A stretch of 64,000 nucleotides of DNA, from contig NW_027361674.1 of the NCBI RefSeq assembly GCF_039654945.1, positions 3,162,001 through 3,226,000 on the forward strand. Reading direction: 5' to 3'. This document shows positions 6,366 through 64,000 of this stretch, piece after piece; within the stretch, counting starts at the first letter, position 1; each line of letters starts with the position of its first letter. The notes beneath the pieces were generated by a model that saw only the letters and a program-made list of their open reading frames with translations, searched no databases and was not told where the DNA came from. The position numbers and the translations under genes are program-made. The DNA comes from Dendrobates tinctorius. Lineage: Eukaryota.

Positions 6366-6489
6366 TAGAAACTGGTTAAAACGCATACGCTTAAAAAACG
6401 CAAGCAAAACGCATGAAGCTTTTTTTGTATGCGTTTCCATTGCGCATGAAGCGCAGCGCTAAAAAACGCTAATGTGAAACTAGCCTTAA

Positions 6490-20917: not shown

Positions 20918-22511
<1,594 letters not shown>

Positions 22512-26609: not shown

Positions 26610-28085
26610 ATGTCTAATTCTAAGTCTGACCGCACTCGTCCCCCTGCCTCCTCTGGCACCTTAGTCAAGTACTTTGCGTGCTCTTCTTGCAATCGCAAAC
26701 TTCCCTCAGGTCAGTCCACTTCCCTCTGCCTGGACTGTAGCAATCCAATCCAGTCCGACGCCGCTCAGGAGCCATCCATAGCCCCAGTGGTGAGTGAGCC
26801 CCCCATGCCGGGCTGGGCCTCCTCTCTATCACAGTCAGTGGCAGACCTCACCAAGGTGTCTCAGTCCCTAGTAGCCGTTCTGGACAAGTTGCCCTTGGGA
26901 GCTTCGGCGGGACCCAGCACGTCTCAGGACGTCCCATCTGAGCCAGCCAGCGGCAGTCGCAAGAGGCCCAGGCAGGACCTCCAGGCGGAATCCTCCCCTC
27001 GTCCTACCTCACCCCATAGTCCCCAGCAGTCTCCCTCTCGGGCCTCCTCTCCCGAGTCAGGCGAAGCGCTTTCGGAATCGGAAGGGGTCTTAGAGCTGGA
27101 TTCGGACCAGGATGCGAACATGAAGGTTACGGTGCAAAACCTCATTGCCGCGATTCACCATACCTTTGACATCGCTGACGCCCCTGCGAAATCCTCAGAT
27201 CAGGAGGTTTCGTTCAGACGGGCGGAAACACCATGCAGGGTGTTTCCCTTCCATTCTGAGTTTGGAAAGATTTTTACAAAGGAGAGAGCAGATCCGACCA
27301 GACGCTTTCAAAGAGGAAAGCGTCTCGGCGTACTGTACCCGTTTGCTAAGGAGCTCACGGACAACTGGGCCGCTTCTCCCTCGGTGGACCCTCCCGTGTC
27401 CAGACTTTCTAATAATACGGTCCTTCCGCTGTCAGGTGTGGCGTCTCTAAAAGATTCTAATGATAGGATCATAGAATCTCTAGCAAAATCTGCCTTCGAA
27501 GCGGCATCAGCAGCGGTATGTCCAGTCTTTGCTTCTTCTTGGGCAGCAAAGGCCATATCCACTTGGGCAGACGACCTTCGGCAGGGCATTCTGGATAAGG
27601 CACGACCAGAGCATTTGGCCGATATCGCCAATCAGATTTCCCATGCGGGGGATTATCTGCTTTCTGCCTCCCTGGATGCCGCATCTTGCGCAGTTCAGGC
27701 GTCAAGTAACATCGTGGCAATCCGACGTACAATTTGGCTCAAGGCCTGGCAGGCGGACTTGTCCTCTAAAAAGTCTCTGACCAATCTGCCTTTTCAGGGA
27801 GTGCGTCTCTTCGGATCACAATTGGATCAGATTATTAAGGACGCTACCGGAGGTACGAGTTCTCTTCTCCCCTCCAAGCCTCGCAGACCTCCTCCAAGGC
27901 GTCAGTTTCGTCCCTTTCGGACTTTCCGCCGTTTCAATACGGCGGAAAACCCTTCCAACCAGCAAAGGCCACAGGCACGTCAGGAAAGAAAGAAGGTTTC
28001 CTTCAGGCCCACTCCGTCCTGGCGGTCCCACTCTTCCCAGGGAAGACCGTCCAGATCTAGATCTGGACGGTCTACATCCGCATGA
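26610..28085 (+). CDS. DIRS ORF1, gag-like (491 aa)
   Basis: ATG-initiated; N-terminal CxxC-x12-CxxC; Ser/Pro-rich linker; conserved C-terminal part (AIRRTIWLKAW, LPFQGVRLFG); basic tail. Confidence 0.85.
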   Translation: MSNSKSDRTRPPASSGTLVKYFACSSCNRKLPSGQSTSLCLDCSNPIQSDAAQEPSIAPVVSEPPMPGWASSLSQSVADLTKVSQSLVAVLDKLPLGASAGPSTSQDVPSEPASGSRKRPRQDLQAESSPRPTSPHSPQQSPSRASSPESGEALSESEGVLELDSDQDANMKVTVQNLIAAIHHTFDIADAPAKSSDQEVSFRRAETPCRVFPFHSEFGKIFTKERADPTRRFQRGKRLGVLYPFAKELTDNWAASPSVDPPVSRLSNNTVLPLSGVASLKDSNDRIIESLAKSAFEAASAAVCPVFASSWAAKAISTWADDLRQGILDKARPEHLADIANQISHAGDYLLSASLDAASCAVQASSNIVAIRRTIWLKAWQADLSSKKSLTNLPFQGVRLFGSQLDQIIKDATGGTSSLLPSKPRRPPPRRQFRPFRTFRRFNTAENPSNQQRPQARQERKKVSFRPTPSWRSHSSQGRPSRSRSGRSTSA

Positions 28086-29991
28086 CTACCATCGGTCTCC
28101 CGTGGGTCCCTTCCAATTGGGAGGTCGACTTCTTTTCTTCAGCGACGTCTGGCTCGCCTCAGTAGAGGACGCTTGGGTCAGAGAGGTTGTATCAACAGGA
28201 TACAAAATAGAGTTCATTTCTCTTCCACGGGATCGCTTCTTCCAATCCCGTCCGCCGAGGGATCCGGCCTTGGTCCCGGGGTTCTGTTCGGCCATCGCCT
28301 CTCTTCTCAGTTCCGGGGTGATTGTGCCTGTTCCCGAATCGGAACGCTTCACAGGGTTTTATTCAAACCTGTTTGTGGTGCCGAAAAAGGACGGGGCAGT
28401 TTGGCCCATTTTGGATCTCAAGTTACTCAACAAGAGAGTTCGCCTTCGCCACTTCCGGATGGAGTCTGTACGCTCGGTAATTGCTTCCATGGAGGAGCAG
28501 GAATTCATGGGTTCCATAGACATCCAAGATGCCTATCTACATGTGCCCATATTTTCCGGACATCAGAAGTTCCTGCGGTTTGCGATTCACCACGAACATT
28601 ACCAGTTCGTCGCGCTTCCTTTTGGGCTCGCCACCGCTCCCAGAGTCTTCACGAAGATTATGGCGGCGTTGATGGCCTTGTTGAGAATCAGAGGTCTCGT
28701 TCTTTTTCCGTACCTCGACGATATCCTGATCAAGGCTCCCTCCTTTCAACAGGCCCGCCTAAGTGTGGCGATCGTTCTAGACACCCTGTCCAGTTTTGGG
28801 TGGATCGTCAACCGGAAAAAGTCCTGTCTGGTCCCTACTCAACGCCTTGTGTTTCTGGGCCTTCTGTTCGACACTCGTCGGTCAAGGGTATTTCTCCCAC
28901 AAGACAAGATCCTTTCCCTGCAGCAGGGCGTGCGATCATTACAGATCACACGATTTCCATCCCTCAGGACAGCCATGAGGGTCCTGGGGAAGATGGTGGC
29001 GGTGATAGAGGCAGTTCCCTTTGCCCAATTTCACGCCAGGCCACTCCAGCAGGCCATTTTGTCCAGGTGGAACAGGTCGGCTCTGTCTCTGGATCGTCCG
29101 GTTCGCCTTTCATGCCGGATCAAGCGGTCTCTCAACTGGTGGTTGACGTCTCCCCTCATTCTCTTGGGGCGGTCTTTTCTTCCCGTTCACTGGCAGATTG
29201 TCACTACGGACGCCAGCCTCATCGGCTGGGGTGCAGTGTTCCGCAATCACACTGTTCAGGGTCGATGGTCGACTCAGGAATCAGCTCTGCAGATCAATGT
29301 TCTAGAGATACGAGCGATCCATCTAGCTCTCGTCCACTGGGAAAGGCGCCTCAAGGGCCTGCCTGTCAGGATTCAGACAGACAATGCCACAGCGGTGGCG
29401 TATATCAACCGCCAAGGGGGGACACGGAGTGTCTCAGCTCTGGCGGAAGTGTCCAGAATTCTTCAATGGGCAGAGACCTTTGTTCCAACGATTTCCGCGG
29501 TTCACATTCCCGGCGTGGACAACTGGGCCGCCGATTTCCTCAGCCGCGAGGGTCTCGCGGCAGGGGAATGGTCCCTACATCCGGAGGTGTTTCATCTGCT
29601 CTGCCGTCGGTGGGGAACTCCGGATGTAGACCTCATGGCATCTCGCCTCAACAGGAAAGTCCCACAATTCGTGTCCAGGTCTCGGGACCCTCTGGCAGTG
29701 GGCGCCGACGCTCTGGCCGTCCCTTGGTCACAGTTCGAGCTCCCCTACCTGTTCCCTCCTCTGCCTCTTCTTCCCAAGTTGTTGAAGAAAATCAAAGCAG
29801 AGGGGATTCCAGTCATCCTCATCGCCCCGAATTGGCCCAGAAGGTCTTGGTTCGCGGACATTGTCAACCTTCTCGCGGACGCTCCCTGGAAGCTTCCCGA
29901 CAGGGCAGACCTGTTGTCTCAAGGCCCGATTTGCCACCCCAATTCTCGGTCGCTCAATTTAACGGCGTGGCTGTTGAGACCGAGGTTTTGA
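27781..29991 (+). CDS. DIRS RT + RNase H + adenine methyltransferase-like frame (start mechanism unknown)
   Basis: IDIQDAY, LPFGLATAP and YLDD (RT); TDAS, LE, TDN and AD (RNase H); DLMAS...YLFPP...PNWP (methyltransferase-like). The frame is open from 27781; the track start is GTG 28102; the first ATG is at 28459. Confidence 0.9.
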   Translation, partial: PICLFRECVSSDHNWIRLLRTLPEVRVLFSPPSLADLLQGVSFVPFGLSAVSIRRKTLPTSKGHRHVRKERRFPSGPLRPGGPTLPREDRPDLDLDGLHPHDYHRSPVGPFQLGGRLLFFSDVWLASVEDAWVREVVSTGYKIEFISLPRDRFFQSRPPRDPALVPGFCSAIASLLSSGVIVPVPESERFTGFYSNLFVVPKKDGAVWPILDLKLLNKRVRLRHFRMESVRSVIASMEEQEFMGSIDIQDAYLHVPIFSGHQKFLRFAIHHEHYQFVALPFGLATAPRVFTKIMAALMALLRIRGLVLFPYLDDILIKAPSFQQARLSVAIVLDTLSSFGWIVNRKKSCLVPTQRLVFLGLLFDTRRSRVFLPQDKILSLQQGVRSLQITRFPSLRTAMRVLGKMVAVIEAVPFAQFHARPLQQAILSRWNRSALSLDRPVRLSCRIKRSLNWWLTSPLILLGRSFLPVHWQIVTTDASLIGWGAVFRNHTVQGRWSTQESALQINVLEIRAIHLALVHWERRLKGLPVRIQTDNATAVAYINRQGGTRSVSALAEVSRILQWAETFVPTISAVHIPGVDNWAADFLSREGLAAGEWSLHPEVFHLLCRRWGTPDVDLMASRLNRKVPQFVSRSRDPLAVGADALAVPWSQFELPYLFPPLPLLPKLLKKIKAEGIPVILIAPNWPRRSWFADIVNLLADAPWKLPDRADLLSQGPICHPNSRSLNLTAWLLRPRF

Positions 29992-31016
29992 GACGGGCAG
30001 GATTCTCTGATCGGGTGATTCATACCATGATCCACGCCAGAAAGCCTTCTTCTTCGAAGATCTATTACCGTACTTGGAAAGCCTATTTCTCCTGGTGTGA
30101 GACCAATGACATCGCGCCCTTGGTTTTTTCGCTCCCTTCTATTCTGGCGTTTCTGCAGGCAGGGCTGGATGCGGGGCTTGCTCTCAGTTCCTTGAAGGGT
30201 CAAGTTTCGGCACTGTCCATTTTATTTCAGAAAACGCTGGCCTCCCGGCCCCAGGTCAAAACCTTCCTCCAGGGTGTGGCTCACACGGTTCCTCCGTACC
30301 GAGCGCCCGTGGATCCTTGGGATCTTAATTTGGTTCTTCAGGTTCTGCAGGGTCCTCCTTTTGAACCTCTCAGGGACGTTTCCCTTTCCCTCCTTTCTTG
30401 GAAAGTGGCCTTTCTGGTGGCCATTACCTCCATCCGGCGCGTGTCGGAATTAGCAGCACTTTCTTGCCGCTCTCCTTTTTTGGTCCTTCATCAGGACAAG
30501 GTAGTTCTGCGGCCTCCGCCCTCTTTTCTTCCGAAGGTGGTATCTTCGTTTCACCTCAATGAGGACATTGTTCTGCCATCCTTCTGCCCGAGCCCAGCTC
30601 ACCCTCGGGAGCGGTCCTTGAACAAGCTGGACCTAGTCAGGGCATTGAGAGTCTATCTAGCCCGGACGACTTCCTTGCGGAAGTCAGACTCTCTGTTCAT
30701 CATTCCTGATGGGGCGAGGAAAGGTCACCCAGCCTCAAAGGCCACTATTGCGCGCTGGATCAGATCGGCAATTTTGGAGGCATACCGGGTCAAGCATCGA
30801 GTGGCCCCTCCAGGGATCAGAGCGCACTCTACCCGAGCGGTGGGTGCCTCCTGGGCGGTGCGCCACAGAGCTTCCGCGCTGCAGCTTTGCAAGGCTGCAA
30901 CGTGGTCATCGGTTCACACCTTTGTGAAATTCTACAGGGTCCACACCTACGCTTCGGCGGACGCCAGCCTAGGTAGAAGGATTCTGCAGGCTGCGGTGGC
31001 GAGTCCACTGGCCTGA
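28086..31016 (+). CDS. DIRS tyrosine recombinase frame (recombinase domain about 29950-31016)
   Basis: Catalytic R (IRRVSEL), HxxR (AHSTR), W (ATW) and Y (KFYR). The frame is open from immediately after the gag stop; the track start is TTG 28173. Confidence 0.9.
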   Translation, partial: LPSVSRGSLPIGRSTSFLQRRLARLSRGRLGQRGCINRIQNRVHFSSTGSLLPIPSAEGSGLGPGVLFGHRLSSQFRGDCACSRIGTLHRVLFKPVCGAEKGRGSLAHFGSQVTQQESSPSPLPDGVCTLGNCFHGGAGIHGFHRHPRCLSTCAHIFRTSEVPAVCDSPRTLPVRRASFWARHRSQSLHEDYGGVDGLVENQRSRSFSVPRRYPDQGSLLSTGPPKCGDRSRHPVQFWVDRQPEKVLSGPYSTPCVSGPSVRHSSVKGISPTRQDPFPAAGRAIITDHTISIPQDSHEGPGEDGGGDRGSSLCPISRQATPAGHFVQVEQVGSVSGSSGSPFMPDQAVSQLVVDVSPHSLGAVFSSRSLADCHYGRQPHRLGCSVPQSHCSGSMVDSGISSADQCSRDTSDPSSSRPLGKAPQGPACQDSDRQCHSGGVYQPPRGDTECLSSGGSVQNSSMGRDLCSNDFRGSHSRRGQLGRRFPQPRGSRGRGMVPTSGGVSSALPSVGNSGCRPHGISPQQESPTIRVQVSGPSGSGRRRSGRPLVTVRAPLPVPSSASSSQVVEENQSRGDSSHPHRPELAQKVLVRGHCQPSRGRSLEASRQGRPVVSRPDLPPQFSVAQFNGVAVETEVLRRAGFSDRVIHTMIHARKPSSSKIYYRTWKAYFSWCETNDIAPLVFSLPSILAFLQAGLDAGLALSSLKGQVSALSILFQKTLASRPQVKTFLQGVAHTVPPYRAPVDPWDLNLVLQVLQGPPFEPLRDVSLSLLSWKVAFLVAITSIRRVSELAALSCRSPFLVLHQDKVVLRPPPSFLPKVVSSFHLNEDIVLPSFCPSPAHPRERSLNKLDLVRALRVYLARTTSLRKSDSLFIIPDGARKGHPASKATIARWIRSAILEAYRVKHRVAPPGIRAHSTRAVGASWAVRHRASALQLCKAATWSSVHTFVKFYRVHTYASADASLGRRILQAAVASPLA

Positions 31017-34945: not shown

Positions 34946-35928
34946 TAAAGGGCACATCTTACACCATCACACACTTCATCAAGGTCGCAGTACAAAATGC
35001 CAGACTTGACACATCAGAAGCACCGGAGTGGGCATGTAAGCATTTTTGGTGAATGACCTCTACTTTATGCTGTATCCTTCTGCATATGAAACCCATAAAA
35101 ATCGCCCAAATTCTCCGGCTGTGATTAAGATTAAATATAGACCATGAAGCCTGCATCGTTATCACTAAGCTGCTACTTCTGTAATCTTAATTAAACAGGA
35201 CTTTCTAGAAGCTTTGATTAATGCGGTAATTAATACATTTGGCGGATTCTTCCAGCACCCGAGTGCTTCCTGCAGATGGGGACAGGATACGGGATATGAA
35301 GTTTCAGCATAAAAAAAAAATTGGATCACTTCTGCAGGGCTTTCCAATATTCTCTCTTAAAGGGATAGTCACTCCATCCTAGAAAAGTCTCATATAGTAT
35401 CTGTGTTAACCCACTGTGCCTTTTCAGATCTTATTGCAGTAATTGAATGGAACATCCAGGTACTAATGTAGATGAATTTGGAGTAGGCACAGAGGAGAAG
35501 ATTGGTGCCCTTGTTGTAGGGACTGGACCCCCAACTACTATGTAACAGGGGCTTCTCCTTATGGTGCGCAGGGGCCCAAAGGATGGGCAGCATGTTTGTG
35601 TCTACACATACACAGTAAGGCCTATTAGCGCCTGACATTGCTATTGGATTTGTTCTTCTGCTTCTGTGACTAAGCAGAGTGAATGCATTCTTGGGTATGA
35701 CTCCATAAGGTTGGCACACCTGTATGTGGGCATGCATTCCCATTATTTGCAGATCTCCGCTCTGTCTGGTTGGATGGGCGGCATCAATACTCGGCTATTT
35801 TAAGGTCTGAGATGTTCGATCACGTTCAATAACGGACTCAAGGACATCCACAGACTTGTGCTGCAGCCGTTCCTGCGTTCTTCACACAATGGGGCTGATT
35901 AAGACTGGTGTTGTGCACGTTGGTCTTA

Positions 35929-36860
35929 GGCTGTGTGCACACGTAGCGATTTTTAAGCGTTTTTGCCGCGATTTTCGGCGCGAAAACGCTGCGAAAAAGT
36001 TTAAAAATCGTACAGAACGCCCCTCATGCATTCCTATGGTATTCCGCAAATGCTGTGCTAATGCTGCGCTTTTTTCCGCGGCGGAATTGCATCGCGGAAA
36101 AAATCGCAGCATGCTCATTCTTTTGTGTGGAATCGCAAAGAATTGCCGCGATTCCGCACCCATACGAATGCATGAGAATCGCTTACTTCCCGCATGTGGC
36201 TATGCCCACCATGCGGGAAGTTAAGCGTCTCATGTGCGGTTGGTACCCACGGTGTGGAGGAGAGGAGACTGTCCTCCAGGCCCTGGGTACCATACCCCTG
36301 TAAAAAAAAGAATAAAAAATAAAAAATCGGGGTATATTTACCTTCCGATGTCCCGCGCTGCATTCCCGGCCAAGCGTTCCCAGTAATGCCTTGCGGCAAG
36401 GCCCTGTAATGACGTAGTCTCGCGTGACTCTAGCGGTCTCGCGAGATCGCTATAGCAACGCGAGACTACGTCATCACAGGTCTCGCAAGGCATTACTGGG
36501 AACGCTGAGGCCCGGGAATGCAGCGCGGGACGCCGGAAGGTAAATATACCCCGATTTTTTTTTTATTTTTTTTTTAGCATTTTAACATTCTATCTTTTGC
36601 TATTGATGCCGCATAGGCAGCCTCAATAGTAAAAACCTGGTCACACTTGTCAAACACTATGTTTGATGAGTGTGACCAACCTGTCAATCACTTTCCAAGC
36701 GATGCTTCAAATCGCTTGGAAAGTGCTTGAATAACGCACGCGAAAATCGCGGCAAAATTGCGATCATAATCGCTGTAAAATCGCGTTTTTTTCCGCGCGA
36801 TTTCTGGGAAGGAGTCCGGTTTTTAGTGAGCGTTTTAAAACGCTACGTGTGCACATAGCC
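35929..36860. mobile_element. Harbinger-like non-autonomous element of about 0.9 kb, copy 2
   Basis: TTA|GGCTGTGTGCACACGTAGCG ... CGCTACGTGTGCACATAGCC|TTA; appears nested in an older MITE ending near 37202. Confidence 0.85.
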
Positions 36861-37633: not shown

Positions 37634-38414
37634 AAAAAGCAAAACACAAATATCCTGAACTAAAAAGTAAAAAATAAACTGCAAACAATGCATAAAGGTA
37701 ATAATAATAATAATGGTATTTAGTAAACATAATTTTGATCAAAATAATGTACAAGCCATCCCGCCACGTCACGGCAACCCTTGTGGGACAGTCCCTACTC
37801 TAGTATTTAAAACCTTTTCACTTGCCAAGTGACGTAAATGTGAATAAGGATCGAGCGGCTGAACCACTAGTAACAGTGTAGGCCAGACTGGATGGCTTTC
37901 CCAGCTCAGAAAGCGGGCGGTCACACCCATATATGCACTGAATGCACAATGAAATGAATAAAAAACAAATCTGAACTGAGAAAAGTAAGTTAATGTGTAT
38001 GCACAATGTAAGTGCATATTAACACATGACCATTAACCAGAGAAAACAAAAAGCAAAAAACACAAATATCCCGAACTAAAAAGTAAAAAATATACTGCAA
38101 ATAATGCATAAAGGTAATAATAATAATAAGGGTATTTAGTAAACATAATTGTGATCAAAATAATGTACAAGCCATCCCGCCACGTCACGGCAACCCTTGT
38201 GGGACAGTCCCTACTCTAGTATTTAAAACCTTTTCACTTGCCAAGTGACGTAAATGTGAATAAGGGTCGAACGGCTGAACCACTAGTAACAGCTTAGGCC
38301 AGACTGGATGGCTTTCCCAGCTCAGAAAGAGGGCGGTCACACCCATATATGCACTGAATGCACAATGAAATGAATAAAAAACTATTTTTTTTTTTAATTT
38401 ATTTTTTTTTTTAT
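37634..38414. mobile_element. Retroposed insertion of about 1.8 tandem units of about 414 bp
   Basis: Unit starts at 37633 and 38047; flanked by the 14-bp direct repeat CTGTCTCAGTTAGC (37620-37633 and 38415-38428). Confidence 0.75.
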
Positions 38415-38713
38415 CTGTCTCAGTTAGCGCAGAATAAGATAGAGGGCATTAAAGAAGTCTGAGGGCACTACAAAATAATAATAGGGATCACTAGCCCCAC
38501 ACTTAAAACATGACTATGTTAATACTCAAGAAAAAAAGAAGTGTGTACAAAAAATGGCCAGGATCACCAAGAATACATTTCAAATATTAGAAACAATACA
38601 TTTTATTAAAGCGTGATTACACAGGATCACACAAACAAGGTACAGACCACATGTTTAAAACAATAAAAAAAAAACATTGAAGGTATAAACCATAGCACCT
38701 GAAGGACCGGTTC

Positions 38714-38916
38714 GGTAAAAGCCATTTAGGGGTAAAAGAAGAAGGCAGCAAAAAGCCTGTAGGTGGATGCGGAGATGCAAATACCCGGTCACAACATGGT
38801 GTGTGGAGACCACGCGTATCGCCACTAAGCGTGGCTTCCTCAGGGGAAAGAGTTGTATCTCCGCATCCACCTACAGGCTTTTTGCTGCCTTCTTTTACCC
38901 CTAAATGGCTTTTACC
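38714..38916 (-). repeat. Fold-back with a hammerhead-like motif in the loop
   Basis: About 65-bp inverted arms; the minus strand of 38810-38846 reads CCCCTGAGGAA-GCCAC-GCTTA-GTGGC-GATAC-GCGT. Confidence 0.55.
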
Positions 38917-40673
38917 ATATGCTAAGGTCCTTATATTTAAACCTATAGCTCAACTGACCCCATTGTTTAGGGTGTTTTGCATTTGCTCTATAAGGGTTCT
39001 CAGTGCAGCCTTAGCCACTGGACTTGAATATTTTGTCTGTTTTTGGGTAATTGACTTCATTTAGACTACTGGCTGATTGTCATTTGTTCAATATTGCGTT
39101 AATCGGTCACTCCAACCTGTAAGTCCCAACGTGAACCTATTCCCTAACCTTACCCTGCGGTGCTACAGTGACATAGTGCGTGGCATGTGGGGTGTCTGAA
39201 CCCTCCCAGCTGAGATATATTGTGAAATAGAAGGATCGGTCATCTGGAATTTCCATATGCCCAATCCTGTATTTTTAAAGGGTTATCTCCATCTTTGTAG
39301 ATGGGTATTGTCATATAGTGCTGGTAAATACAAGATATTTTGCAATTTACTGCTTATTAATTGCTTAATTTTCAGCCGCTCTTGAGACATTAATACAAAT
39401 AATGTAGAGAACGGGACCAGCACGTCTTAGCTATTGTGAACAGGTGCCAACCAAAGAAAACATAAGTAAAAAAAACAATAAGATTGCACCATAACTTACA
39501 AAGAATGATAGGACATTGAAGCTGCATTACTGGCTTGAGCCATTAACACTTTTATTTACAGTTCATTGCCTTGGCAACCGACTACTGCTCCTAGACAGCA
39601 GATCATGCCCAGTGCTTACAAGTTATTTTCTATTGAGCTTGTAAACCCTGCGCTGAAGCTGGCCAGGAGCGTGGTTTTTCATCTTAATTCAGGCCAGCTT
39701 CAGCACGGAGCTTGCAAGCTACGTAGCAGCGGTGGTCAGTCTCCTAGGAAACAAGCTGTAAACAAAAGTGTTAATATCTCAAGAGCAGGACATTACAAAA
39801 GTGCTTGCTTTTACTAATACTGGCCAATAATATCCATTTTAGGAGAATGAGAACTAACCCCTTAAGCGATGTTTGGCTGTGGCGGCTTCTTTCTATATCT
39901 TACAATGCATGCCTAGGGTATCGGAGACTTTAGCAAGCCTTTATTTTCTACTGGAAAAAAAGTTTTGTCAACGTAAGTTTTTTTCTTCCAGAAGCCAGGA
40001 GCGCCATCTGTCCCCTCCGCTGTGGTTAGCAGAACCGGGGAAGGCAGCAGCTGGGACATTGATGAGTGATTTCGGGATGGTCGTGGAATTTTACACTAGG
40101 CCTTTGGTCATCACTCGTGCAGACCAGCTAATGGGATGGAGATATTTTTGAGATTGGAATGTATAGCCCAGGAGGGAACGGCAGTGAGATCTGCCATAAC
40201 TACCTCCTACTTGGGCATTTTCCAAGTGGTCGATTCAGAAATGTAGTGCTTTGTATGCTCTCGCACTGGGCCTGGTAGCAAGTGGCACTATGCAGAAAGA
40301 GAAGCCGAGAATGAATACGTTTCACTGGTTCTTTTACTGTTTACTGTGGTCACTGTCAAAGTTCTAACGGTTGCCATTGGTAACAGACAGTTTAGTTGCA
40401 ATTGGTAGACACGTATGAGGGTGTCGTGTGCCTGCGGCGGCATGGGGAGTCTATAACAGACAGAGACGCTGTGATCGGCCATACGGCGTCCGTGCATCAT
40501 GTGACTTGCGATTTAGACACTGGTTTAGGTACAGGCGGATCAGTTTCTATACGTTCACACCTGAGCATCATACAAATGAATAAGCTCTCCGCTCTCTTTC
40601 TTCAAAGATACTTAGAAGGAATCTGGTCGTTGTTTTAAGGAATTGAGTGAGTTGTCGAGAAGAATTTAGATGG

Positions 40674-41054
40674 GTTGCTCTTGGCAACAGCGGCATTTAT
40701 GTCTGGTAGGTTGCTATGGGCAACTGCCCCACATCAGGAATCGCTTCACTGAAGACGGAAGCAGGTTGATATGAACAACTGCTACAGGGAATGAATTCTA
40801 GGGGTTGTTGTAGGCAACTGCGCCATGTCGCAAGAAATCAGATTGGTCGATATGGGCAATTGTTCCACTGCAAAAGGAATCCTTTGGTTGCTATGGGCAA
40901 CTGCTCCGCTTAAGAAGAAATCAGTTGTGTTGCTATGCGCAACTGCTGCAAAGAAGAAAAAATAGGTTGCTATGGACAACTACTCCATGTACCAAGGAAT
41001 CTGGTTGCTATGGGCAACTGGTTCACTTAAAGAGGTATCTGTTTCTAAGGGGAC
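40674..41054. promoter_or_regulatory. Array of RFX X-box-like palindromes
   Basis: GTTGCTATGGGCAAC-like cores at 40674, 40710, 40765, 40804, 40846, 40887, 40929, 40966 and 41004, plus a degenerate one at 41041. Confidence 0.6.
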
Positions 41055-41099
41055 CTGCGCTACCAATGGCGCCAGCAACAGTAACACCTAGGTAATGGC

Positions 41100-41460
41100 C
41101 CATGCATTACTACATCACCCACCACCATAACGTCTGTGGTCACCATGACGCACTGCTCCCCGGTAGTGACAGCAGTGGCCCTTCCCCCCTGCGCTGTCAC
41201 TTTAAGAGCGGACACATTACGTCATGGCTCGCCGCGGTGCATTCTGGGCGGGGAGGAGACCTCGCCATTTTCATTGGGGAGCAGACAGAGGCGGATACCG
41301 GCTCAGCAGCTGCAGGAGGAGGATGCGCCCCTGGACCTCGGCTGTCAGCTAGGAGAGGCTCGGGCCTGGGCCGGTGACAGGAGGACGCGGCATCCCCGGT
41401 ATAAAGCCCCGGACACCCCTACTGTCACCACTGAAGAGTACGGACCGCTGAACGGTACGG
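41100..41460 (+). promoter_or_regulatory. KLC1: Probable KLC1 promoter and non-coding exon 1
   Basis: CpG-rich; TTACGTCA near 41217; GC box GGGCGGGG near 41246; YY1 CGCCATTTT near 41263; candidate donor ACG|GTACGG at 41454/41455. KLC1 has a non-coding first exon in mammals. Confidence 0.5.
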
Positions 41461-41626
41461 CCGCCAGGGGGCAGTGCTGGCGCTATGCTCGGGTGTTATT
41501 GTGGGAGTGCAGCGGCTGTGGGACATGGCGGAGTACTGCTGCTCCGTCATAGGTCAGGCTGCAGGATGGAGAAGGAGGCCATGTTAGGTGCACAGTCATG
41601 GAGGAAGGGGCTGCATGGGTGTGGGG

Positions 41627-42897
41627 GCTGGTGTAATGATGGACGCTGCACTGATACTGGGGGGTCTGGTGTAATGATGGACGCTGCACTGATACTGGGG
41701 GGTCTGGTGTAATGATGGATGCTGCACTGATACTGGGGGGTCTGATGTAATGATGGATGCTGCACTGATACTGGGGGGTCTGATGTAATGATGGATGCTG
41801 CACTGATACTGGGGGGTCTGATGTAATGATGGATGCTGCACTGATACTGGGGGGTCTGATGTAATGATGGATGCTGCACTGATACTGGGGGGTCTGATGT
41901 AATGATGGATGCTGCACTGATACTGGGGGGTCTGATGTAATGATGGATGCTGCACTGATACTGGGGGGTCTGGTGTAATGATGGATGCTGCACTGATACT
42001 GGGGGGTCTGATGTAATGATGGATGCTGCACTGATACTGGGGGGTCTGGTGTAATGATGGACGCTGCACTGATACTGGGGGGTCTGGTGTAATGATGGAC
42101 GCTGCACTGATACTGGGGGGTCTGGTGTAATGATGGATGCTGCACTGATACTGGGGGGGTTCTGGTGTAATGGATGGTGGCTGCACTGATATGGGGGGGT
42201 TGTGGTGTAATGGATGGTGGCTGCACTGGTATGGGGGGCTTGTGGTGTAATGGATGGTGGCTGCACTGATATGGGGGGCTTGTGGTGTAATGGATGGTGG
42301 CTGCACTGATATGGGGGGCTTGTGGTGTAGTGGATGGTGGCTGCACTGGTATGGGGGGCTTGTGGTGTAATGGATGGTGGCTGCACTGATATGGGGGGCT
42401 TGTGGTGTAATGGATGGTGGCTGTACTGATATGGGGGGCTTGTGGTGTAATGGATGGTGGCTGTACTGATATGGGGGGCTTGTGGTGTAATGGATGGTGG
42501 CTGCACTGATATGGGGGGGTTGTGGTGTAATGGATGGTGGCTGCACTGATATGGGGGGGGGGTTGTGGTGTAATGGATGGTGGCTACACTGATATGGGGG
42601 GGGGGGGGGTTGTGGTGTAATGGATGGTGGCTACACTGATATGGGGGGGGGGTTGTGGTGTAATGGATGGTGGCTACACTGATATGGGGGGGGGTTGTGG
42701 TGTAATGGATGGTGGCTGCACTGATATGGGGGGGTTGTGGTGTAATGGATGGTGGCTGCACTGATATGGGGGGGGGGTTGTGGTGTAATGGATGGTGGCT
42801 GCACTGATATGGGGGGGGGGTTGTGGTGTAATGGATGGTGGCTGCACTGATATGGGGGGGTTGTGGTGTAATGGATGGTGGCTGCACTGATATGGGG
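41627..42897. repeat. G-rich minisatellite with two unit types (38 bp, then 40 bp or longer)
   Basis: About 14 units of GATACTGGGGGGTCTGRTGTAATGATGGAYGCTGCACT, then about 18 units of TTGTGGTGTAATGGATGGTGGCTGCACTGATAT(G)n. Confidence 0.95.
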
Positions 42898-45800
42898 ATT
42901 TTCTATGTAATAGGGAAAAGAATCTCCATTACTGACGACAATGTTGCCCCTATGTTTTTCTGTGAGCCTCCGTAGTAATGGCCCAGACACTTCCTGTGAG
43001 AGATGCAGACATTGTATCGTATCAGTGACCGTCATTGCTCTTCAGGATGATGTACGTTACGTAGTTGTGGGTGCAGAGTGCGGCGGCCCTCGTCTGTGAA
43101 GTTGATCTTGTCATCGAACACGTGTTAGAGGTGGGGAGCAGCGATGTGCGGCTCAAGATGCTCCATTGTCCTTGGTTGTACCGTTCTGCTACAGTCCCAG
43201 AGATGGAGGAAGTATTATCACGGGGTCGTGCTGTTGGATCGATACAGGGAGCATGGCAGTTCCATCCATCTTGTTCTGTGGATACTTTGTGTTTTTATGG
43301 GTGCTGTGCAGTGATGGGGTTATTAGGTTTAGACTGCATTGTCCTGGCGGGGGTGTCTAGTTGGAGGAGAAACGTTTAGATGCCCAATATGAGGGTCTTT
43401 CAGTATTACAAAACACCAATCTCACGGGACACGTCATGAATACTTGGAAATGTCCTGGCTTCTCGATTGATGAAGATTGTGAACTGGAAATGACCCGCTA
43501 AGGACCGGAGTTCTACTGATGGCACTTTAGGTCGAGTGGCACCAATTATACAGGTAGACAACACCAGAAAGATGAATTTAAAGGGAACCTGCCACAACAA
43601 ATTTGCAGTCCGATCTCTGGACACTCTCTGATCAAGAGTGGGAAGAGCTGAGCAGATTGATCTATGTCCCGTATATTCAGTATAACTTGTAGTCTATCCA
43701 TTTAATTCATGCTTATTCTGGGTTTAGGAGACCAATGGGCATCTTAATCTGTGATCAAAAGTTATCTCTAGGCACGCCATTTTCGGTGGAGGTTGTCAAT
43801 CACTGATTAAGACCGCCCCCTTGACCCCTAACCACAGAATGAGCAGGGATCCCAGTGGATAAATAACAAGTTAGACTGAATATTTGCCTACAAACCGATA
43901 TATCAGTCTTCTCCTCTTTACAAAATGCCGCCCATAAGGTGACAGCGATGGTTGCCTCGGCACGGGGCCGTCCTTTCTGGTCTTGCTTCTCCTCAGCCAT
44001 TTGCAGATTTTGGCAGACTGGAGGATGTCCCCTAGAAACAACGAGATAACTACTACATAGATAAACCTGGTCTGCAACATGTGACTCCCGCCCGTAGCTG
44101 TGGTGGGATTACTGCGGCCGAGGTTGCAAGGACTGTCAGTTTGACTCTTTGGCTTGGATCATCTCTTGTGATTATCCCTCCGGAGAGCAGGTGGATCGGC
44201 AGCAGTGAGTCATTGTGGGTATACACCTACTGATTCACCTGGCTGGATATGCTGCAGAATCTGCCTCTCCTGGTTATCCTCCTGATATTGGGATGTCTGG
44301 GTCAGAGCTCAGCTATTTTGGCCTTGTCTCCCCCCCCCCCCCCCCCCCCCCCCTCCTAGTGGGAATGGAGCTACATGACGGATTGTGGGGTTCATGCTTG
44401 TTTGTTAATATATGCCCCGGTGTCAGTGCCATGCATCACCCCCCCCCCCCTCCAGATCCAATCCAGAATAATATAAAGCAATGCTAGTCATGTGCAGAGA
44501 GGACAATACGGAGGGTAAAATGGTGTCCATGTAGGAATACCTGCATCACAGCTGCTGTCTTCTATAGAGCAGCTGCAGGGGCATTGTGCTACACTTAAAG
44601 GGGCTCTCCAAATTCCTAAAATAAAAAAATCCGGTGTGCGCTGTATGCATAGTCGCCCGTGCCTCTTCAGTCTCTTTTTTTTTTTTTTTTTATCCGTTTG
44701 TCCTGCCCACCCCTGTTTTCACATGTTGATATGGGGGGGGGGGAAGCAGGTGGACCACTCAAGACATGAAGCTATCAATCCCATGCTTTGATTTAAAAGC
44801 CCATCCACCTTTACAGCGCTAGTCTTCGTCCCTGTCGTTCAGGAGGAGCTGATCATGGCAGTATGAAACATGACAGACAGAAGTGATCGGCAGAGAAGAC
44901 CCAATTTTCAGAGCTGGATTAACCCCCTTTAAAGGGTCTGTATCTGAGGCGGATCAAGTGCCTGCTGTGGGACCCCATGGATTTAAAGGTATGTCCCAGG
45001 ATGGCTTAATTCATGCCATATTGGCACCGAAGTGTGGGTATGGGGTACTCAGCCCAGAGGGGCACGGAAAGGAGATGCGAGCTTGTTTTGATATGGCTGT
45101 CCTTAAAGGCCCCCTACAAAACTGGATGGTTTGTCGGTGGGAAAAAAAAAAAAGAATGGTAGTGTAAGAGGGAAGGGTTAATAAAATTCTTCCAGGGTAG
45201 AAACAATATTGCGGTAGGAAGGGGCAATTATTGTGCCAGGGAAGGTTATAGTGCGTTATTGTGCGGGAGGGAACAGGTGGATGTGATGTGGGGTTAGACT
45301 ATAGTGCGGGGGTGCATTGAGAACTGCAGGAAAATAATAGCTAATGCACGCTGTTTTGATGCATTCTTTTTTGCAAGTAAATTATGTTAAAAAAAATCAT
45401 TAATCCACCATAAAAGTGCACGGCACACTGTTTACTTCTGGTGTTTTGAGGGGGTAGGAGAGGGGTATGATGCATGGTCCCCTGCATGCCATGCAGTGGC
45501 ACACGGTGGCGGCTTTGTTAGGTACATTACTGCAGAGGGCACGGACTGCCCGTAAACCTTCACGTCAGCACATGGCAACCGCTTTTCCCGTTGCAAGGTT
45601 ACGTGTGCAGAGTTTCTCTTGGTTGCTGCGCTTTATTAATGAGATGGGGCCTGCTCCTTATTCTGGGCTGTCCTCGGCACACCCTGCCAGTGATGCATCG
45701 GGCACCGTCACCCTGCTGCCTCAGACAATGGAGCCTGGCAACAAAGAGAGGCGCACGGGCTCCGATGTGAGAGCCGAGCCGCATGCCCGCATTGTTATTC

Positions 45801-55025: not shown

Positions 55026-55926
55026 GGCTATGTGCCCACGTAGCGTTTAAATCCGGACACTGAAAACCGGACTCCTTCCCAGAAATCGCGCGGTTTTTTC
55101 CACGCGATCTTACCGCGATTATGTTCGATTTTGCCTCGATTTTCGCGTGCTATATTCAAGCACTTTCCAAGCGATTTGAAGCATCGCTTGGAAAGTGATT
55201 GACAGGTTGGTCACACTCGTCAAACAGTGTTTGACAAGTGTGACCAGGTTTTTACTATTGAGGCCGCCTATGCGGCATCAATAGTAAAAGAATGTAAAAA
55301 ATAAAAAATCGGGGTATATTTACCTTCCGACATCCCGGGCCTCAGTGTTCCCAGTAATGCCTTGCGAGACCTGTGATGACGTTGGTCTCGCGTTGCTATA
55401 GTGATCTCACGAGACCACTAGAGTCACGCGAGACTACGTCATTACAGGACCTTGCCGCAAGGCATTACTGGGAACGCTAGGCCGGGAATGCAGCGCAGAA
55501 CGTCGGAAGGTAAATATACCCCTTTTTTTTTTTAATTTTTTTTTTTTTTTTTTTTTTTTTTACAGGGGTATGGTACCCAGGGCCTGGAGGACAGTCTCCT
55601 CTCCTCCACACCGTGGGTACCAACCGCACATGAGACGCTTAACTTTGCGCATGGTGGGCATAGCCACATGCGGGAAGTAAGCGATTCTCATGCATTCCTA
55701 TGGGTGCGGAATCGCGGCAATTCTTTGCAATTCCGCACAAACGAATGAGCATGTTGCGATTTTTCTTCCGCGATGCGATTCCGCCGCGGAAAAGCGCAGC
55801 ATGAGCACAGCATGTGCGGAATGCCATAGGAATGCATGGGGTGCGTTCTGTACAAGATTTTTAAACATTTTCGCGCCGAAAATCGTGGCAAAAAACGCTT
55901 AAAAATCGCATCGTGGGCACACAGCC
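55026..55926. mobile_element. Harbinger-like element of about 0.9 kb, copy 3 (reverse of copy 2)
   Basis: TTA|GGCTATGTGCCCACG ... CGTGGGCACACAGCC|TTA. Confidence 0.85.
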
Positions 55927-60200: not shown

Positions 60201-60940
60201 AAATAACATTACTTGATTTACTGGTGCGTTTAAGAAAAAAAAAAATGGGCCGGAGGGTGCGATATCTCAGCTTCTGTTTCCCCAAAGATAAGATAATGTG
60301 CAGAATTGGCAGTATTTATTCTGGTTGGCATACAAATTGGATCTTCAGAAGAAAGCATTCTTCCTCGTGCCACGTTTCAGCCACCCTCTTAGTCTCTTCT
60401 GACTAAAAAAAATAAAATAATTCCACATTTCACCTGTCTTTGATCAGTGTCTTGTCCATTTTTGTGAATGGGGGCTAAAAAAATCCTGAGATTTCTCAAG
60501 CTTTTCATATCAAACCGGCCGTGAAAAAATGGAGAGCACACAGATGGCCTCAGAGTGCTGTCCAAAGTTTTCACAGACCCATAGACTTGCACTGACAATT
60601 TTGATCTGAGAATCTGATCAAGATTGGATGTGAGTCTGTGATTTTGTCTTCCTCAGTGGGGGCAATGTGTGACCGCTGCATGGGGCAGGACTTATGGACC
60701 CACCAAAAGTCTTCTCTATTAACACGTTTAGTGCCCAGTCCCTACTGTAGCTTAGTCCACCCTCGTCCATGTCTGACGCAAGGAGTTGTTTGTGCTTACT
60801 AGAATCAAAGTTAATGGACGTGTCGACGATTTTTGGTGAAGGAATAACGTTTTATTTTTGCAATTTTTACATCGGGCTTAGATTGGGTTTGATACATTCT
60901 GGCTCAGTTCTGACTCTCCGGCATTCTCATGTTTTGCAGA

Positions 60941-61201
60941 ATGTATGACAACATGTCCACGATGGTGTTTCTGAAGGAAGACAAGTTGGAGAAACTCACC
61001 CAAGATGAGATCATTTCTAAGACCAAGCAGGTGATCCAAGGATTGGAGGCCTTGAAAAACGAGCACAACTCCATCCTCCAGAGCTTGCTGGAAACACTGA
61101 AGTGCTTGAAAAAGGATGACGAGAGCAACTTGGTGGAAGAGAAATCCAACATGATCCGCAAGTCTTTGGAGATGCTGGAGCTGGGGTTAAGTGAAGCACA
61201 G
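60941..61201 (+). CDS. KLC1: Kinesin light chain 1, first coding exon (87 aa); the gene continues beyond the window
   Basis: ttttgcag|A ATG TAT GAC AAC ATG...GCA CAG|gtaatt; MYDNMSTMVFLKEDKLEKLTQDEIISKTKQVIQGLEALKNEHNSIL...LGLSEAQ is the KLC1 N-terminus. Confidence 0.96.
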
Positions 61202-62181: not shown

Positions 62182-64000
62182 TTTCTCCTGCGTCTCATTG
62201 GGGGACACAGAGACAGTGGGTGTTATGCTGCTTGTCACTAGGAGGACACTAAGTAAACCAGAAAAAAAGTTAGCTCCTCCCCTGTAGTATACACTCTTTC
62301 GCTGGATGAGATATCTCCAGTTCTTGCTTAGTGTCTATAGGAGGCACTTGGGTCTGGTTTCAGACCCCACCGTTTTATTTTATTTTTGAATTTTCTGTAA
62401 ATTTTTATTTTTTAATTAACGGAGTGAAGGGGGCGACGGTTCCTTTCTACGGCCCGCTCTCCCCCGTAACAACAGGCAAGCATGCGGAGTATACCTCCCC
62501 GTACACTTTCCTGCAACGTACGGGGCTGATTCCTCTGGCGATGATCCTTGCGGTCTCGGTATTCCACGGATACGAGGGCAGGCACATGGAGTGCAATGGA
62601 GAAGACTGGAACAGCGCTGGCCTGAATCAGCCACATAGCTCTCCAGCCCCCTGCCATAGGGAGGATCGATTGAGCATACCCCTTTAAGAACCCCTCCAGC
62701 TCTGCTTCATCAGCCAGGAGGATGAGAAGACCTGCATGGATGGCCCCGGACAGCGCGGCCTGCCGAGCACTGGAGTGGAGGTATGGGGTCGGGTCCTGGC
62801 CCCCGGGAGAAGCGCCGACTTGGCATCAGAGGCGGTGCACCGCGACCCACCTCCCCCACCCCCGGTCTCGGCGCTCGGGTAGGCTGAAAATTTAGTCCCC
62901 GGCTTTTCCGGCCTACTAGGCCGCAATTTGAATGGCGCCGCCCCCGGCGCCTACCGTGGGTAGGCCGAAAATTTAGTCCCCGGCTTTTCCGGCCTGCTAG
63001 GCCGCAATTTAAATAGCGCCGCCAGCACTAACGTCGCCGCCCCCTCTTGGCGCCTCTCATTACTAACAACGCGCAATCCTAATCTCGGGGGCCATGTCTT
63101 TCACCTCAGCCTGCTCTGGATATGAGCTGTGAGGCCTGAATGCTGCCGGATACTGGGTGTCACCACAGAGCCACCGCTATTCCTCCCAGGGGACACAGCA
63201 CAGGATAAGCTGCATCTGCCCTCAGATTAAAGCTTAACCCCTTCCCGGCACATTCCCTGAAGCTGCAGAGAGACTCTGCCGTTAACCCTTTCAGGAGCGC
63301 TATGTCTCAAACTAAGGAGGCTAAACGGGCTGATAAGAAGCACACTGCGTTTTTTACCGTGTGTACCACTTGCAAGTCTGCCTTACCCAGTGCACAGACT
63401 AATCTGTTATGCACGGCCTGCGACCCGACCTGTGCTCAAACGCCCCTCGCTGCCGCTGCTGATGGGCCTCCTGCGTTTAGTACCCCTGAGTGGGCTGCGT
63501 CCCTGTCACGGTCAGTGGAGTCTCTGACCCAGGCTATATTCTCCCTCCGGGAGGACTCTTTAAGTCAGAAAGCGTCCTTGCCTCCCGAGGAGGGCTCTGG
63601 CATCGGCCGGGAACCGTCCACCAGCATGGGCCGTAATCATTCAAGAGATGGTCAGGGCTCTAGAAAGCGGACCCATGACGCGTCCCCCTAGTCTCGGTCG
63701 CACCTCTGCGACTCCTGTCTCTCGCTCTCCCTCTCCTGAGGTTCACAGCGAGCACGACTCTGAATTCGAATCTGATACCTCAGCCCATCAGAATCCCCCA
63801 ACTGATCAAGAGTTGCTTGATTCTCTTACAGAATCAGTCAACAGGATTCTGAAGTTGGATGAGGAAAATATTCCTGTTCCAGCACATCCTATCTCACTTA
63901 AGAAAACCAAGCGTGTGCACAGGTTATTTACCAGCCATCCGGACTTTAAGGAAATTGTCCAGAAACATAGGGATCGTCTACATAAGCGGTTCACAGGGCA
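62182..64000 (+). mobile_element. Second DIRS1-type element, 5' part (cut by the window end)
   Basis: Left end TTTCTCC...ATTGGGGGACACAGAGAC...AAAAAAAGTTAGCTCCTCC is homologous to the left ITR at 25427; a gag-like ORF starts at 63302. Confidence 0.88.
63302..64000 (+). pseudogene. DIRS gag-like ORF with a +1 frameshift near 63684-63688
   Basis: CTTC-x12-CTAC and PEWAASLSRSV match gag of the first element. After the C5 run, homology continues in the +1 frame (LKKTKRVHRLFTSHPDFKEIVQKHRDRLHKRF). Confidence 0.75.

What the first reader, a model, noticed from the sequence alone, without database searches (positions are those of the whole stretch)
40674..41054. Regular array of 9-10 RFX X-box palindromes with divergent spacers just upstream of the KLC1 promoter
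Seen: 15-bp quasi-palindromic cores (consensus GTTGCTATGGGCAAC) at start-to-start distances of 36, 55, 39, 42, 41, 42, 37, 38 and 37 bp. The spacers are much more diverged than the cores. Another X-box (GTTGCCATTGGTAAC) lies near 40369. Established: this matches the RFX X-box, and RFX factors drive ciliary, neuronal and spermatid transport genes. Inference: an old tandem amplification, possibly of a MITE fragment (GATTGGTTGCTATGGGCAACTGCTCC), kept as a homotypic RFX cluster at roughly four helical turns. The layout resembles a CRISPR array but is not one.
Basis: partly seen in the sequence, partly recalled or inferred. Interest (0 to 1): 0.7.

Follow-up and report, generated by a model that had tools for sequence, protein, structure and literature searches.

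The report
Old X-box minisatellite upstream of KLC1
Just upstream of the likely kinesin light chain 1 promoter in a poison frog lies an old, worn tandem repeat whose units each carry an RFX-type binding motif; it could feed RFX input into the promoter, but nothing here shows it has been kept for that purpose.

Summary
The array is real. Ten cores sit at exactly the stated positions and spacings, far above chance. It is an old, degenerate 36-55-bp minisatellite, not repeats with unrelated spacers. Each unit has a 24-nt block (X-box plus CTGCTCCAC), a second shared 8-mer (AAGGAATC) and two short indel-prone linkers. Only four cores, plus the solitary site at 40370, meet the classical RFX consensus, all at the widest allowed spacing (N3).

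After allowing for choice of the best window, the X-box is not significantly better kept than the other alignable columns (P about 0.12-0.16). Two related species keep the array collinear at about 2.5-3.5% divergence. Substitutions fall in cores as often as outside them, and this species has lost a half-site in core 3.

The unit is not a dispersed repeat, so a MITE origin is unsupported, and the spacings are not helically phased. The array lies about 210-600 bp upstream of a strongly expressed non-coding exon. That exon is most likely KLC1 exon 1, but the splice link was not shown.

The scan has noted other RFX-like and TF-like minisatellites elsewhere in this genome. Verdict: an ordinary promoter-upstream minisatellite with plausible but unproven RFX binding.

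The parts
40672..41064 (+). Whole degenerate minisatellite: 10 units of 36-55 bp. Unit = 24-nt block GGTTGCTATGGGCAACTGCTCCAC + 2-5 nt linker + AAGGAATC + 0-5 nt linker.
40674..40688 (.). Core 1, GTTGCTCTTGGCAAC. Meets the strict X-box consensus on the minus strand (N3).
40710..40724 (.). Core 2, GTTGCTATGGGCAAC. Strict X-box consensus (N3).
40743..40763 (+). Extra 21 nt in unit 2 (GCTTCACTGAAGACGGAAGCA). It looks like the 3' half of a unit without its X-box and explains the 55-bp spacing. Judged by eye, not tested.
   Evidence: spacer list; inference
40765..40779 (.). Core 3, GTTGATATGAACAAC. Degenerate, 3 mismatches. Relatives read C at 40769 (organisms B and C) and G at 40775 (organism C), both closer to the consensus.
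40804..40818 (.). Core 4, GTTGTTGTAGGCAAC. Degenerate; only the second half-site is intact.
40846..40860 (.). Core 5, GTCGATATGGGCAAT. Degenerate.
40887..40901 (.). Core 6, GTTGCTATGGGCAAC. Strict X-box consensus (N3).
40929..40943 (.). Core 7, GTTGCTATGCGCAAC. One mismatch to the strict consensus.
40966..40980 (.). Core 8, GTTGCTATGGACAAC. One mismatch to the strict consensus.
41004..41018 (.). Core 9, GTTGCTATGGGCAAC. Strict X-box consensus (N3).
41041..41055 (.). Core 10, GTTTCTAAGGGGACC. Barely recognisable (4 mismatches); followed by a CCAAT at 41063-41067.
40370..40384 (.). Solitary X-box GTTGCCATTGGTAAC. Meets the strict consensus on both strands (N3) and overlaps an inverted CCAAT. A possible founder or older unit.
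40395..40410 (+). Degenerate neighbour GTTGCAATTGGTAGAC, starting 25 bp after the solitary X-box starts.
   Evidence: read directly
41238..41271 (.). Core-promoter motifs recognised by eye: a ZNF143/Staf-like site (TGCATTCTGGG, reverse strand) at 41238-41248 and a YY1-like GCCATTTT at 41264-41271.
   Evidence: motif identities from own knowledge
41400..41405 (+). TATAAA box within the CpG-rich stretch 41201-41600.
41267..41454 (+). Strongly expressed non-coding exon, the probable KLC1 exon 1. The start is approximate. The end is at ACG|GTACGG, where an organism C contig stops.
   Evidence: X5 depth 4,417-13,409; X20 contig 41151-41454 at depth 219. The only ATG found by eye in the exon (41323) opens a 9-codon frame.
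60940..61201 (+). KLC1 first coding exon. The acceptor TTTTGCAG lies 1 nt before the ATG at 60941, so the 5'UTR must lie in an upstream exon.
   Evidence: PDB 9pmb_C, kinesin light chain 1, E 3.5e-33

Best explanation
This is an old, fixed, decaying minisatellite. A piece of promoter-upstream DNA of about 40 bp that carried an RFX-type X-box was duplicated in tandem to about ten units, by slippage or unequal exchange. It may be related to the solitary perfect X-box at 40370. The duplication happened roughly ten times further back than the split of the three sampled poison-frog species. Since then the units have drifted at about the same rate as their surroundings, with substitutions throughout and indels in two short linkers. 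Four units still offer consensus-grade X-boxes and two more are one mismatch away, all with the wide N3 half-site spacing. Where RFX factors are expressed, the array is therefore probably bound opportunistically and may add a modest activating or chromatin-opening input to the promoter 210-600 bp downstream, which is most likely KLC1's. It is not maintained unit by unit by selection.

Shown: the anatomy, single-copy status, collinear orthologues, and expression of the downstream exon. Inferred: the duplication mechanism, RFX binding, the link to KLC1, and near-neutral decay.
For: - Array and spacings. Enrichment 11 versus 0.61 expected.
- Units are homologous over their whole length. A second motif, AAGGAATC, is shared by the spacers (0 of 300 shuffles as good). 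Multi-unit self-alignments give 66-74% identity over 96-177 nt.
- Conservation is roughly even across alignable columns: half-sites 0.92, centre 0.87, 3' extension 0.76, motif B 0.79. The best-window-corrected P is 0.12-0.16. The centre, which the classical consensus leaves unspecified, is kept about as well as the half-sites.
- Organism B has a contig spanning 40169-41137 with 24 differences and 3 gaps. Organism C has a contig spanning 40662-41010 with 11 differences. A second individual of the same species is identical over 40505-41047.
- Divergence of the array (2.5-3.2%) is like that of the flanks and exon 1 (0.7-4.9%).
- 4 of the 9 listed A-versus-C differences fall in cores, which make up 39% of the span (binomial p = 0.74).
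- At 40769, 40775 and 40822 the relatives carry the array-consensus letter, so this species' copy has decayed.
- Strict consensus is met at 40370, 40674, 40710, 40887 and 41004.
- Earlier notes record other TF-motif minisatellites in this genome.
Against: - None of nine 24-nt blocks has an indel, while unit length varies from 36 to 55 bp. Uncorrected, the half-sites are better kept than the other alignable columns (83/90 versus 151/189, Fisher p = 0.009). Both facts fit some constraint on the block.
- The array has survived as a recognisable structure for a long time next to a promoter.
- The species comparison has almost no power at 3% divergence. Most differences in organism B were not listed: 164 rows were cut.
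Confidence: 0.6

Rival explanations
1. Selected homotypic RFX cluster. The tandem amplification was retained because multiple X-boxes give KLC1 strong or cell-type-specific RFX-dependent transcription in neurons, ciliated cells or spermatids. Selection acts on the total number of sites, so individual units can turn over.
For: - Five strict-consensus X-boxes lie within 650 bp, against one in the other 63 kb.
- Half-sites are the best-kept columns at 0.92.
- None of the nine blocks has an indel.
- The array sits 210-600 bp upstream of a highly expressed exon and is collinear in three species.
Against: - The excess conservation is not significant after correcting for window choice.
- The centre and the 8-nt 3' extension lie outside the half-sites that define the consensus, yet are kept nearly as well.
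- Between-species changes are not depleted in cores, and core 3 has recently degraded.
- All sites have N3 spacing, one base wider than the 14-bp optimum (own knowledge).
- No klc gene was found in the held supplement text of Xenopus Rfx2 or mouse RFX2 target papers.
- Similar TF-like minisatellites elsewhere in this genome were judged ordinary.
Confidence: 0.25
2. The conserved element is the whole asymmetric 24-nt block, possibly together with AAGGAATC. It would be read by a different factor or factor pair, for example a multi-zinc-finger protein, or RFX plus a partner on CAACTGCTCC. The X-box resemblance would then be only part of the site.
For: The well-kept stretch runs 8-9 nt beyond the palindrome on one side only. 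The centre of the palindrome is kept as well as the half-sites. A second 8-mer recurs in 8 of 9 spacers.
Against: Even conservation across a unit is also what simple neutral decay of a tandem repeat gives. No candidate factor could be named or tested, and no motif library was on hand.
Confidence: 0.08
3. The array is a fragment or the internal tandem array of a transposable element (MITE, Helitron or similar) that landed near the promoter.
For: The genome is full of transposons, and the 40 kb upstream holds LINE, Tc1-type and DIRS-like elements. Frog MITEs are known to carry internal tandem repeats (own knowledge).
Against: - Depth over 39815-41145 in organism B is about 8-18, against up to about 180,000 on flanking repeats.
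- No second copy of the block or its flanks exists in 64 kb.
- No inverted repeats flank the array.
Confidence: 0.04

Closest known systems
RFX X-box promoter motif (GTNRCC N0-3 RGYAAC) of ciliary and other RFX target genes
   Same: Two inverted half-sites match the classical consensus (consensus quoted in PMC5752003), and the location is promoter-proximal.
   Different: There are ten tandem copies rather than one or two. All have N3 spacing rather than the usual 13-14-bp form (own knowledge). They lie at about -210 to -600 rather than within about 200 bp of the start site. KLC1 was not found among the RFX targets that could be checked.
Promoter-upstream minisatellites/VNTRs that modulate transcription (INS VNTR, MAOA uVNTR, 5-HTTLPR; own knowledge)
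   Same: Tandem units of tens of bp lie a few hundred bp upstream of a promoter, with factor-binding motifs in each unit.
   Different: Those are young, homogeneous and polymorphic in copy number. This one is old (about 84% match to consensus), is identical in a second individual, and is collinear in two other species.
Xenopus rDNA spacer 60/81-bp enhancer repeats (own knowledge)
   Same: In a frog, about ten tandem copies of a factor-binding element lie directly upstream of a promoter, born by local duplication.
   Different: That is a Pol I system bound by UBF with proven enhancer activity. Here the promoter is Pol II and no activity has been shown.
Other TF-motif minisatellites noted by this scan in the same genome (s1-381479 RFX-like intron array; s1-382833 ERE-like array upstream of hoxb7; s1-377364 CRE palindromes)
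   Same: Same genome; tandem repeats near promoters or exons whose units resemble palindromic factor sites.
   Different: Those that were followed up were reported as large or young arrays. This one is short, old and degenerate. Their sequences could not be compared with this one.
CRISPR array
   Same: A superficial layout of short palindromic repeats at regular spacing.
   Different: This is a eukaryotic genome. The repeats are degenerate, the 'spacers' are homologous to each other, and there are no cas genes. It is not a member.

Membership tests
RFX X-box | Inverted half-sites GTNRCC and RGYAAC separated by 0-3 bp | tested here: met
   Met by 4 of 10 cores (40674, 40710, 40887, 41004) and by 40370, all at N3. 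Two more cores are one mismatch off and four are degenerate.
RFX X-box | Preferred 13-14-bp spacing (N1/N2) seen in most validated sites | tested here: not met
   Every site has N3 spacing. The preference itself is from own knowledge, not a tool.
RFX X-box | Occupancy by an RFX protein and dependence of the gene on it | not testable with these tools
   No ChIP or ATAC data for this species. Klc genes were not found in the held supplement text of Xenopus Rfx2 and mouse RFX2 target papers.
RFX X-box | Motif positions conserved more than flanks in orthologues | tested here: inconclusive
   4 of the 9 listed differences between organisms A and C fall in cores, against 39% expected (p = 0.74). Divergence is only about 3% and the list was cut.
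Minisatellite (tandem repeat) | Head-to-tail units of 10-100 bp that are homologous over their whole length | tested here: met
   TRF period 41, score 138. Ten units. A shared second motif in the spacers. Self-alignments of 66-74% over 96-177 nt.
Minisatellite (tandem repeat) | Copy-number variation between individuals or species | tested here: not met
   A second individual is identical over 40505-41047. Organisms B and C are collinear with 2-3 small gaps.
MITE / dispersed transposon fragment | Many dispersed copies in the genome | tested here: not met
   Depth is about baseline in organism B contigs, against about 10^5 on nearby repeats. There are no other copies in the window.
MITE / dispersed transposon fragment | Terminal inverted repeats and target-site duplication | tested here: not met
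   No inverted repeat pairs in 40300-41200.
Homotypic cluster of transcription-factor sites | Three or more sites for one factor within a few hundred bp near a promoter | tested here: met
   Five strict and two near-consensus X-boxes lie within 650 bp, ending about 210 bp before the expressed exon. This holds by sequence only.
CRISPR array | Near-identical repeats with unrelated spacers, in a prokaryote with cas genes | tested here: not met
   The repeats are degenerate and the spacers share AAGGAATC. The window is vertebrate: it holds a KLC1 exon.

The most novel reading that the evidence does not exclude
A lineage-specific tandem amplification turned a single upstream X-box into a cluster of about ten RFX sites. 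The cluster is under selection for site number rather than unit identity, and it makes KLC1, a general kinesin-1 cargo adaptor, an RFX-driven gene in dendrobatid frogs. That would be a concrete case of a minisatellite creating a new regulatory input.
Probability: 0.2. Interest if true: 0.55.

Novelty: new member of a known kind. Interest (0 to 1): 0.3.

Why it matters
If RFX binds the array and drives the promoter, this would be a tidy natural example of regulatory innovation by tandem duplication of a factor site, in a giant, repeat-rich frog genome. It would also link RFX factors to a core axonal-transport gene. As the evidence stands, its main value is as a caution. This genome produces many minisatellites near promoters whose units resemble palindromic factor sites. 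An apparent 'conserved core, divergent spacer' pattern can come from indels in short linkers and from choosing the best-kept window.

Tried and rejected
- Literature search for the exact core sequence: no paper. RFX with KLC1: only incidental co-mentions. RFX with tandem repeat and Xenopus: nothing relevant.
- Rfam scan of 39800-43200: no RNA family.
- RNA fold of the array: z = -1.7, not special, so a structured-RNA reading was dropped.
- Profile (nhmmer) of the 27-nt windows around the block across the window: only the nine array units are significant. 40369 scores E = 13.
- To fetch orthologous promoters from other frogs, I searched the spurious 138-aa ORF over the promoter against the protein collection: no hit. 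Deeper cross-species comparison was therefore not possible with these tools, and I ran no further search on it.
- I picked run X18 expecting exon-1 RNA, but it held only the transposon part of the stretch.
I did the scan in Python instead.
- Helical phasing was rejected: spacings modulo 10.5 scatter over the whole turn.
- By-sequence look-up of earlier findings: blank.

Full report
**Observation**

The sequence at 40674-41055 holds ten copies of a 15-bp quasi-palindrome. They start at 40674, 40710, 40765, 40804, 40846, 40887, 40929, 40966, 41004 and 41041, with 0-4 mismatches to GTTGCTATGGGCAAC. The start-to-start distances are 36, 55, 39, 42, 41, 42, 37, 38 and 37 bp, exactly as reported. Tandem Repeats Finder calls a period-41 array, and the repeat finder puts seven units in register. 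The relaxed pattern GTNRC-N4-RGYAAC gives 11 strand matches, all between 40370 and 41018, where 0.61 are expected; no shuffle reaches 11. The array is real and non-random.

**Anatomy of the unit**

- Aligning the units shows that the well-kept part is not the 15-bp palindrome alone. It is an asymmetric 24-nt block, GGTTGCTATGGGCAACTGCTCCAC, with no indel in nine units.
- The 'spacers' are not unrelated. Eight of nine contain a second 8-mer, AAGGAATC, with 15 mismatches in 72 cells. No shuffle out of 300 yields any 8-mer that good.
- Multi-unit self-alignments give 66-74% identity over 96-177 nt.
- What is truly unalignable is two short linkers (2-5 nt and 0-5 nt). Length changes sit there, and they make ungapped spacer identity look near random: 0.34-0.40, or 0.46 gapped against 0.43 for shuffled spacers. 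Cores score 0.79-0.82.
- The 55-bp interval holds an extra 21 nt that looks by eye like the 3' half of a unit without its palindrome.

This is a degenerate minisatellite, not a repeat-and-spacer layout.

**Is the core better kept than the rest?**

Match to the unit consensus is 0.92 for the two pentamer half-sites, 0.87 for the five central bases, 0.76 for the 3' extension and 0.79 for the second motif. A naive Fisher test gives p = 0.009. If conservation were uniform at 0.84 and one picked the best window, a core this good would arise with P = 0.12-0.16. The central bases, which the classical RFX consensus leaves free, are kept about as well as the half-sites. The within-array pattern is therefore compatible with even decay. 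The absence of indels from the 24-nt block remains a mild hint of constraint.

**RFX match**

The classical consensus is GTNRCC(0-3N)RGYAAC, as quoted in PMC5752003. On the minus strand the cores read GTTGCC-CAT-AGCAAC. The strict consensus is met at 40674, 40710, 40887 and 41004, and on both strands at the solitary site 40370. There is only one other match in the remaining 63 kb. Cores 7 and 8 are one mismatch off, and cores 3, 4, 5 and 10 are degenerate. All sites use the widest allowed spacing (N3). From my own knowledge, most validated and in-vitro-selected sites are 13-14 bp (N1/N2). RFX binding is plausible but not assured. The spacings (36-55 bp) fall at all helical phases, so the 'four helical turns' idea does not hold.

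**Context**

- The first coding exon of kinesin light chain 1 is at 60940-61201. Its acceptor lies one base before the ATG. The peptide matches PDB 9pmb chain C, kinesin light chain 1, at E = 3.5e-33. The 5'UTR must therefore lie upstream.
- Apart from CpG-rich stretches at 36 kb and 50-56 kb, which I take to be repeats because their ORFs resemble each other, the CpG-rich stretch in the 20 kb upstream is 41201-41600. It holds a TATAAA at 41400, a YY1-like and a ZNF143-like site, and a CCAAT at 41063 (motif names from my own knowledge).
- Laying public contigs on 38000-41625 showed very high depth (4,417-13,409) over about 41267-41508 in another sample of the same species, against about 10 over the array. 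An organism C contig covers 41151-41454 at depth 219 and ends exactly at ACG|GTACGG.
- The one ATG I found by eye in the exon (41323) opens only a 9-codon frame, so it looks non-coding.
- I infer that this is KLC1 exon 1 and that the array lies about 210-600 bp upstream of the start region.
- The 40 kb upstream is transposon-rich: a LINE reverse transcriptase, a Tc1/Sleeping-Beauty-type transposase and a DIRS-like element.

**Not a dispersed repeat**

In organism B's contigs, depth over 39815-41145 is 5-18, while neighbouring transposon pieces reach 10^3-10^5. The block and its flanks have no other copy in the window, and no inverted repeats flank the array. The MITE idea is unsupported.

**Related species**

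- Organism B has one contig covering 40169-41137 with 24 differences and 3 gaps (2.5%).
- Organism C has a contig covering 40662-41010 with 11 differences and 2 gaps (3.2%).
- A second individual of the same species is identical over 40505-41047.

The array is fixed, collinear and older than these splits. Units match their consensus at about 84%, while each lineage has changed by about 1.7%. Under neutrality the amplification would be about ten times older than the species split.

The array is no more conserved than its flanks (0.7-4.9% in neighbouring contigs) or exon 1 (3.6% in organism C). Of the nine A-versus-C differences listed, four lie in cores, which make up 39% of the span (p = 0.74). 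Two of those four are in the free centre. The other two (40769, 40775) lie in half-sites of core 3, where the relatives carry the consensus letter, so this species' core 3 has decayed. Power is very low, and the tool omitted 164 further differences, so organism B's changes could not all be placed.

**Other checks**

- No Rfam family matches, and the RNA fold is unremarkable (z = -1.7).
- No klc gene was found in the held supplement text of the Xenopus Rfx2 target paper (PMC3889689) or the mouse RFX2 spermiogenesis paper (PMC4498915). The files may be incomplete.
- No paper contains the core sequence.
- An organism C contig of uncertain library type covers the array alone at depth 13. That might mean low-level upstream transcription, but this cannot be decided.
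- An attempt to reach orthologous promoters in more distant frogs, through a spurious ORF over the promoter, found nothing.

**Earlier notes of this scan**

Earlier notes say the genome is that of a poison frog (the dyeing poison frog, per s1-382833). They list several other minisatellites whose units resemble palindromic factor sites, two of them RFX-like (s1-381479, s1-381621). Those that were followed up were judged ordinary repeats. I did not test those claims. They lowered my prior that any one such array is a selected device.

**Conclusion**

The best reading (confidence about 0.6) is an old local tandem duplication of promoter-upstream DNA that carried an X-box, now decaying at about the neutral rate. 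It still offers four to six good RFX sites, which may be bound opportunistically and may contribute modestly to the likely KLC1 promoter. A selected homotypic RFX cluster remains possible (about 0.25). A different factor reading the whole 24-nt block (about 0.08) and a transposon origin (about 0.04) are less likely.

Noticed in passing
window 41629-42897: A young, G-rich 38-bp minisatellite of about 32 copies at 95% identity. It is almost free of CpG, has strong GC skew, and starts 175 bp after the exon-1 donor in the presumed first intron of KLC1. It creates long spurious ORFs on the minus strand.
   Followed up: partly
window 41427-41464: A 17-bp unit repeated 2.3 times spans the exon-1 donor, giving two donor-like GTACGG sites 17 nt apart (41438 and 41455).
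   Followed up: no
window 41205-41492 (organism B contigs): Organism B has two contigs of identical extent over the promoter and exon 1, one with 5 differences and one with 18. This suggests a second allele or a paralogous copy of the promoter region in that species.
   Followed up: no
window 40662-41010 (organism C contig): A run guessed to be RNA holds a contig covering only the array at depth 13, with nothing on either flank. Exon 1 is at depth 219 in the same run. This may be upstream or enhancer-type transcription, or DNA carry-over.
   Followed up: no
window 26610-31016 and 63302-63691: A DIRS-like retroelement with long open frames: a gag-like ORF with a LAP2alpha-type domain, RT plus RNase H, and a 947-aa frame with no Pfam hit. 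A gag-like ORF start that looks similar by eye lies near the window's end, but it had no Pfam hit.
   Followed up: partly
window 21123-22154 (minus strand): An apparently intact 343-aa Tc1/Sleeping-Beauty-type transposase ORF (HTH_SB, HTH_Tnp_Tc3_2, DDE_3).
   Followed up: partly
window 4146-6440 (minus strand): A 764-aa LINE-type reverse-transcriptase ORF (RVT_1).
   Followed up: partly
window 35856-36400 and 55690-55902: CpG-rich stretches (observed/expected above 1) with similar spurious ORFs (…FLPRCDSAAEK…). These are probably copies of one repeat family, and young or unmethylated to judge by their CpG content.
   Followed up: no
window 41093-41111: A short palindrome, GTAATG-N7-CATTAC, lies between the array and the promoter.
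   Followed up: no
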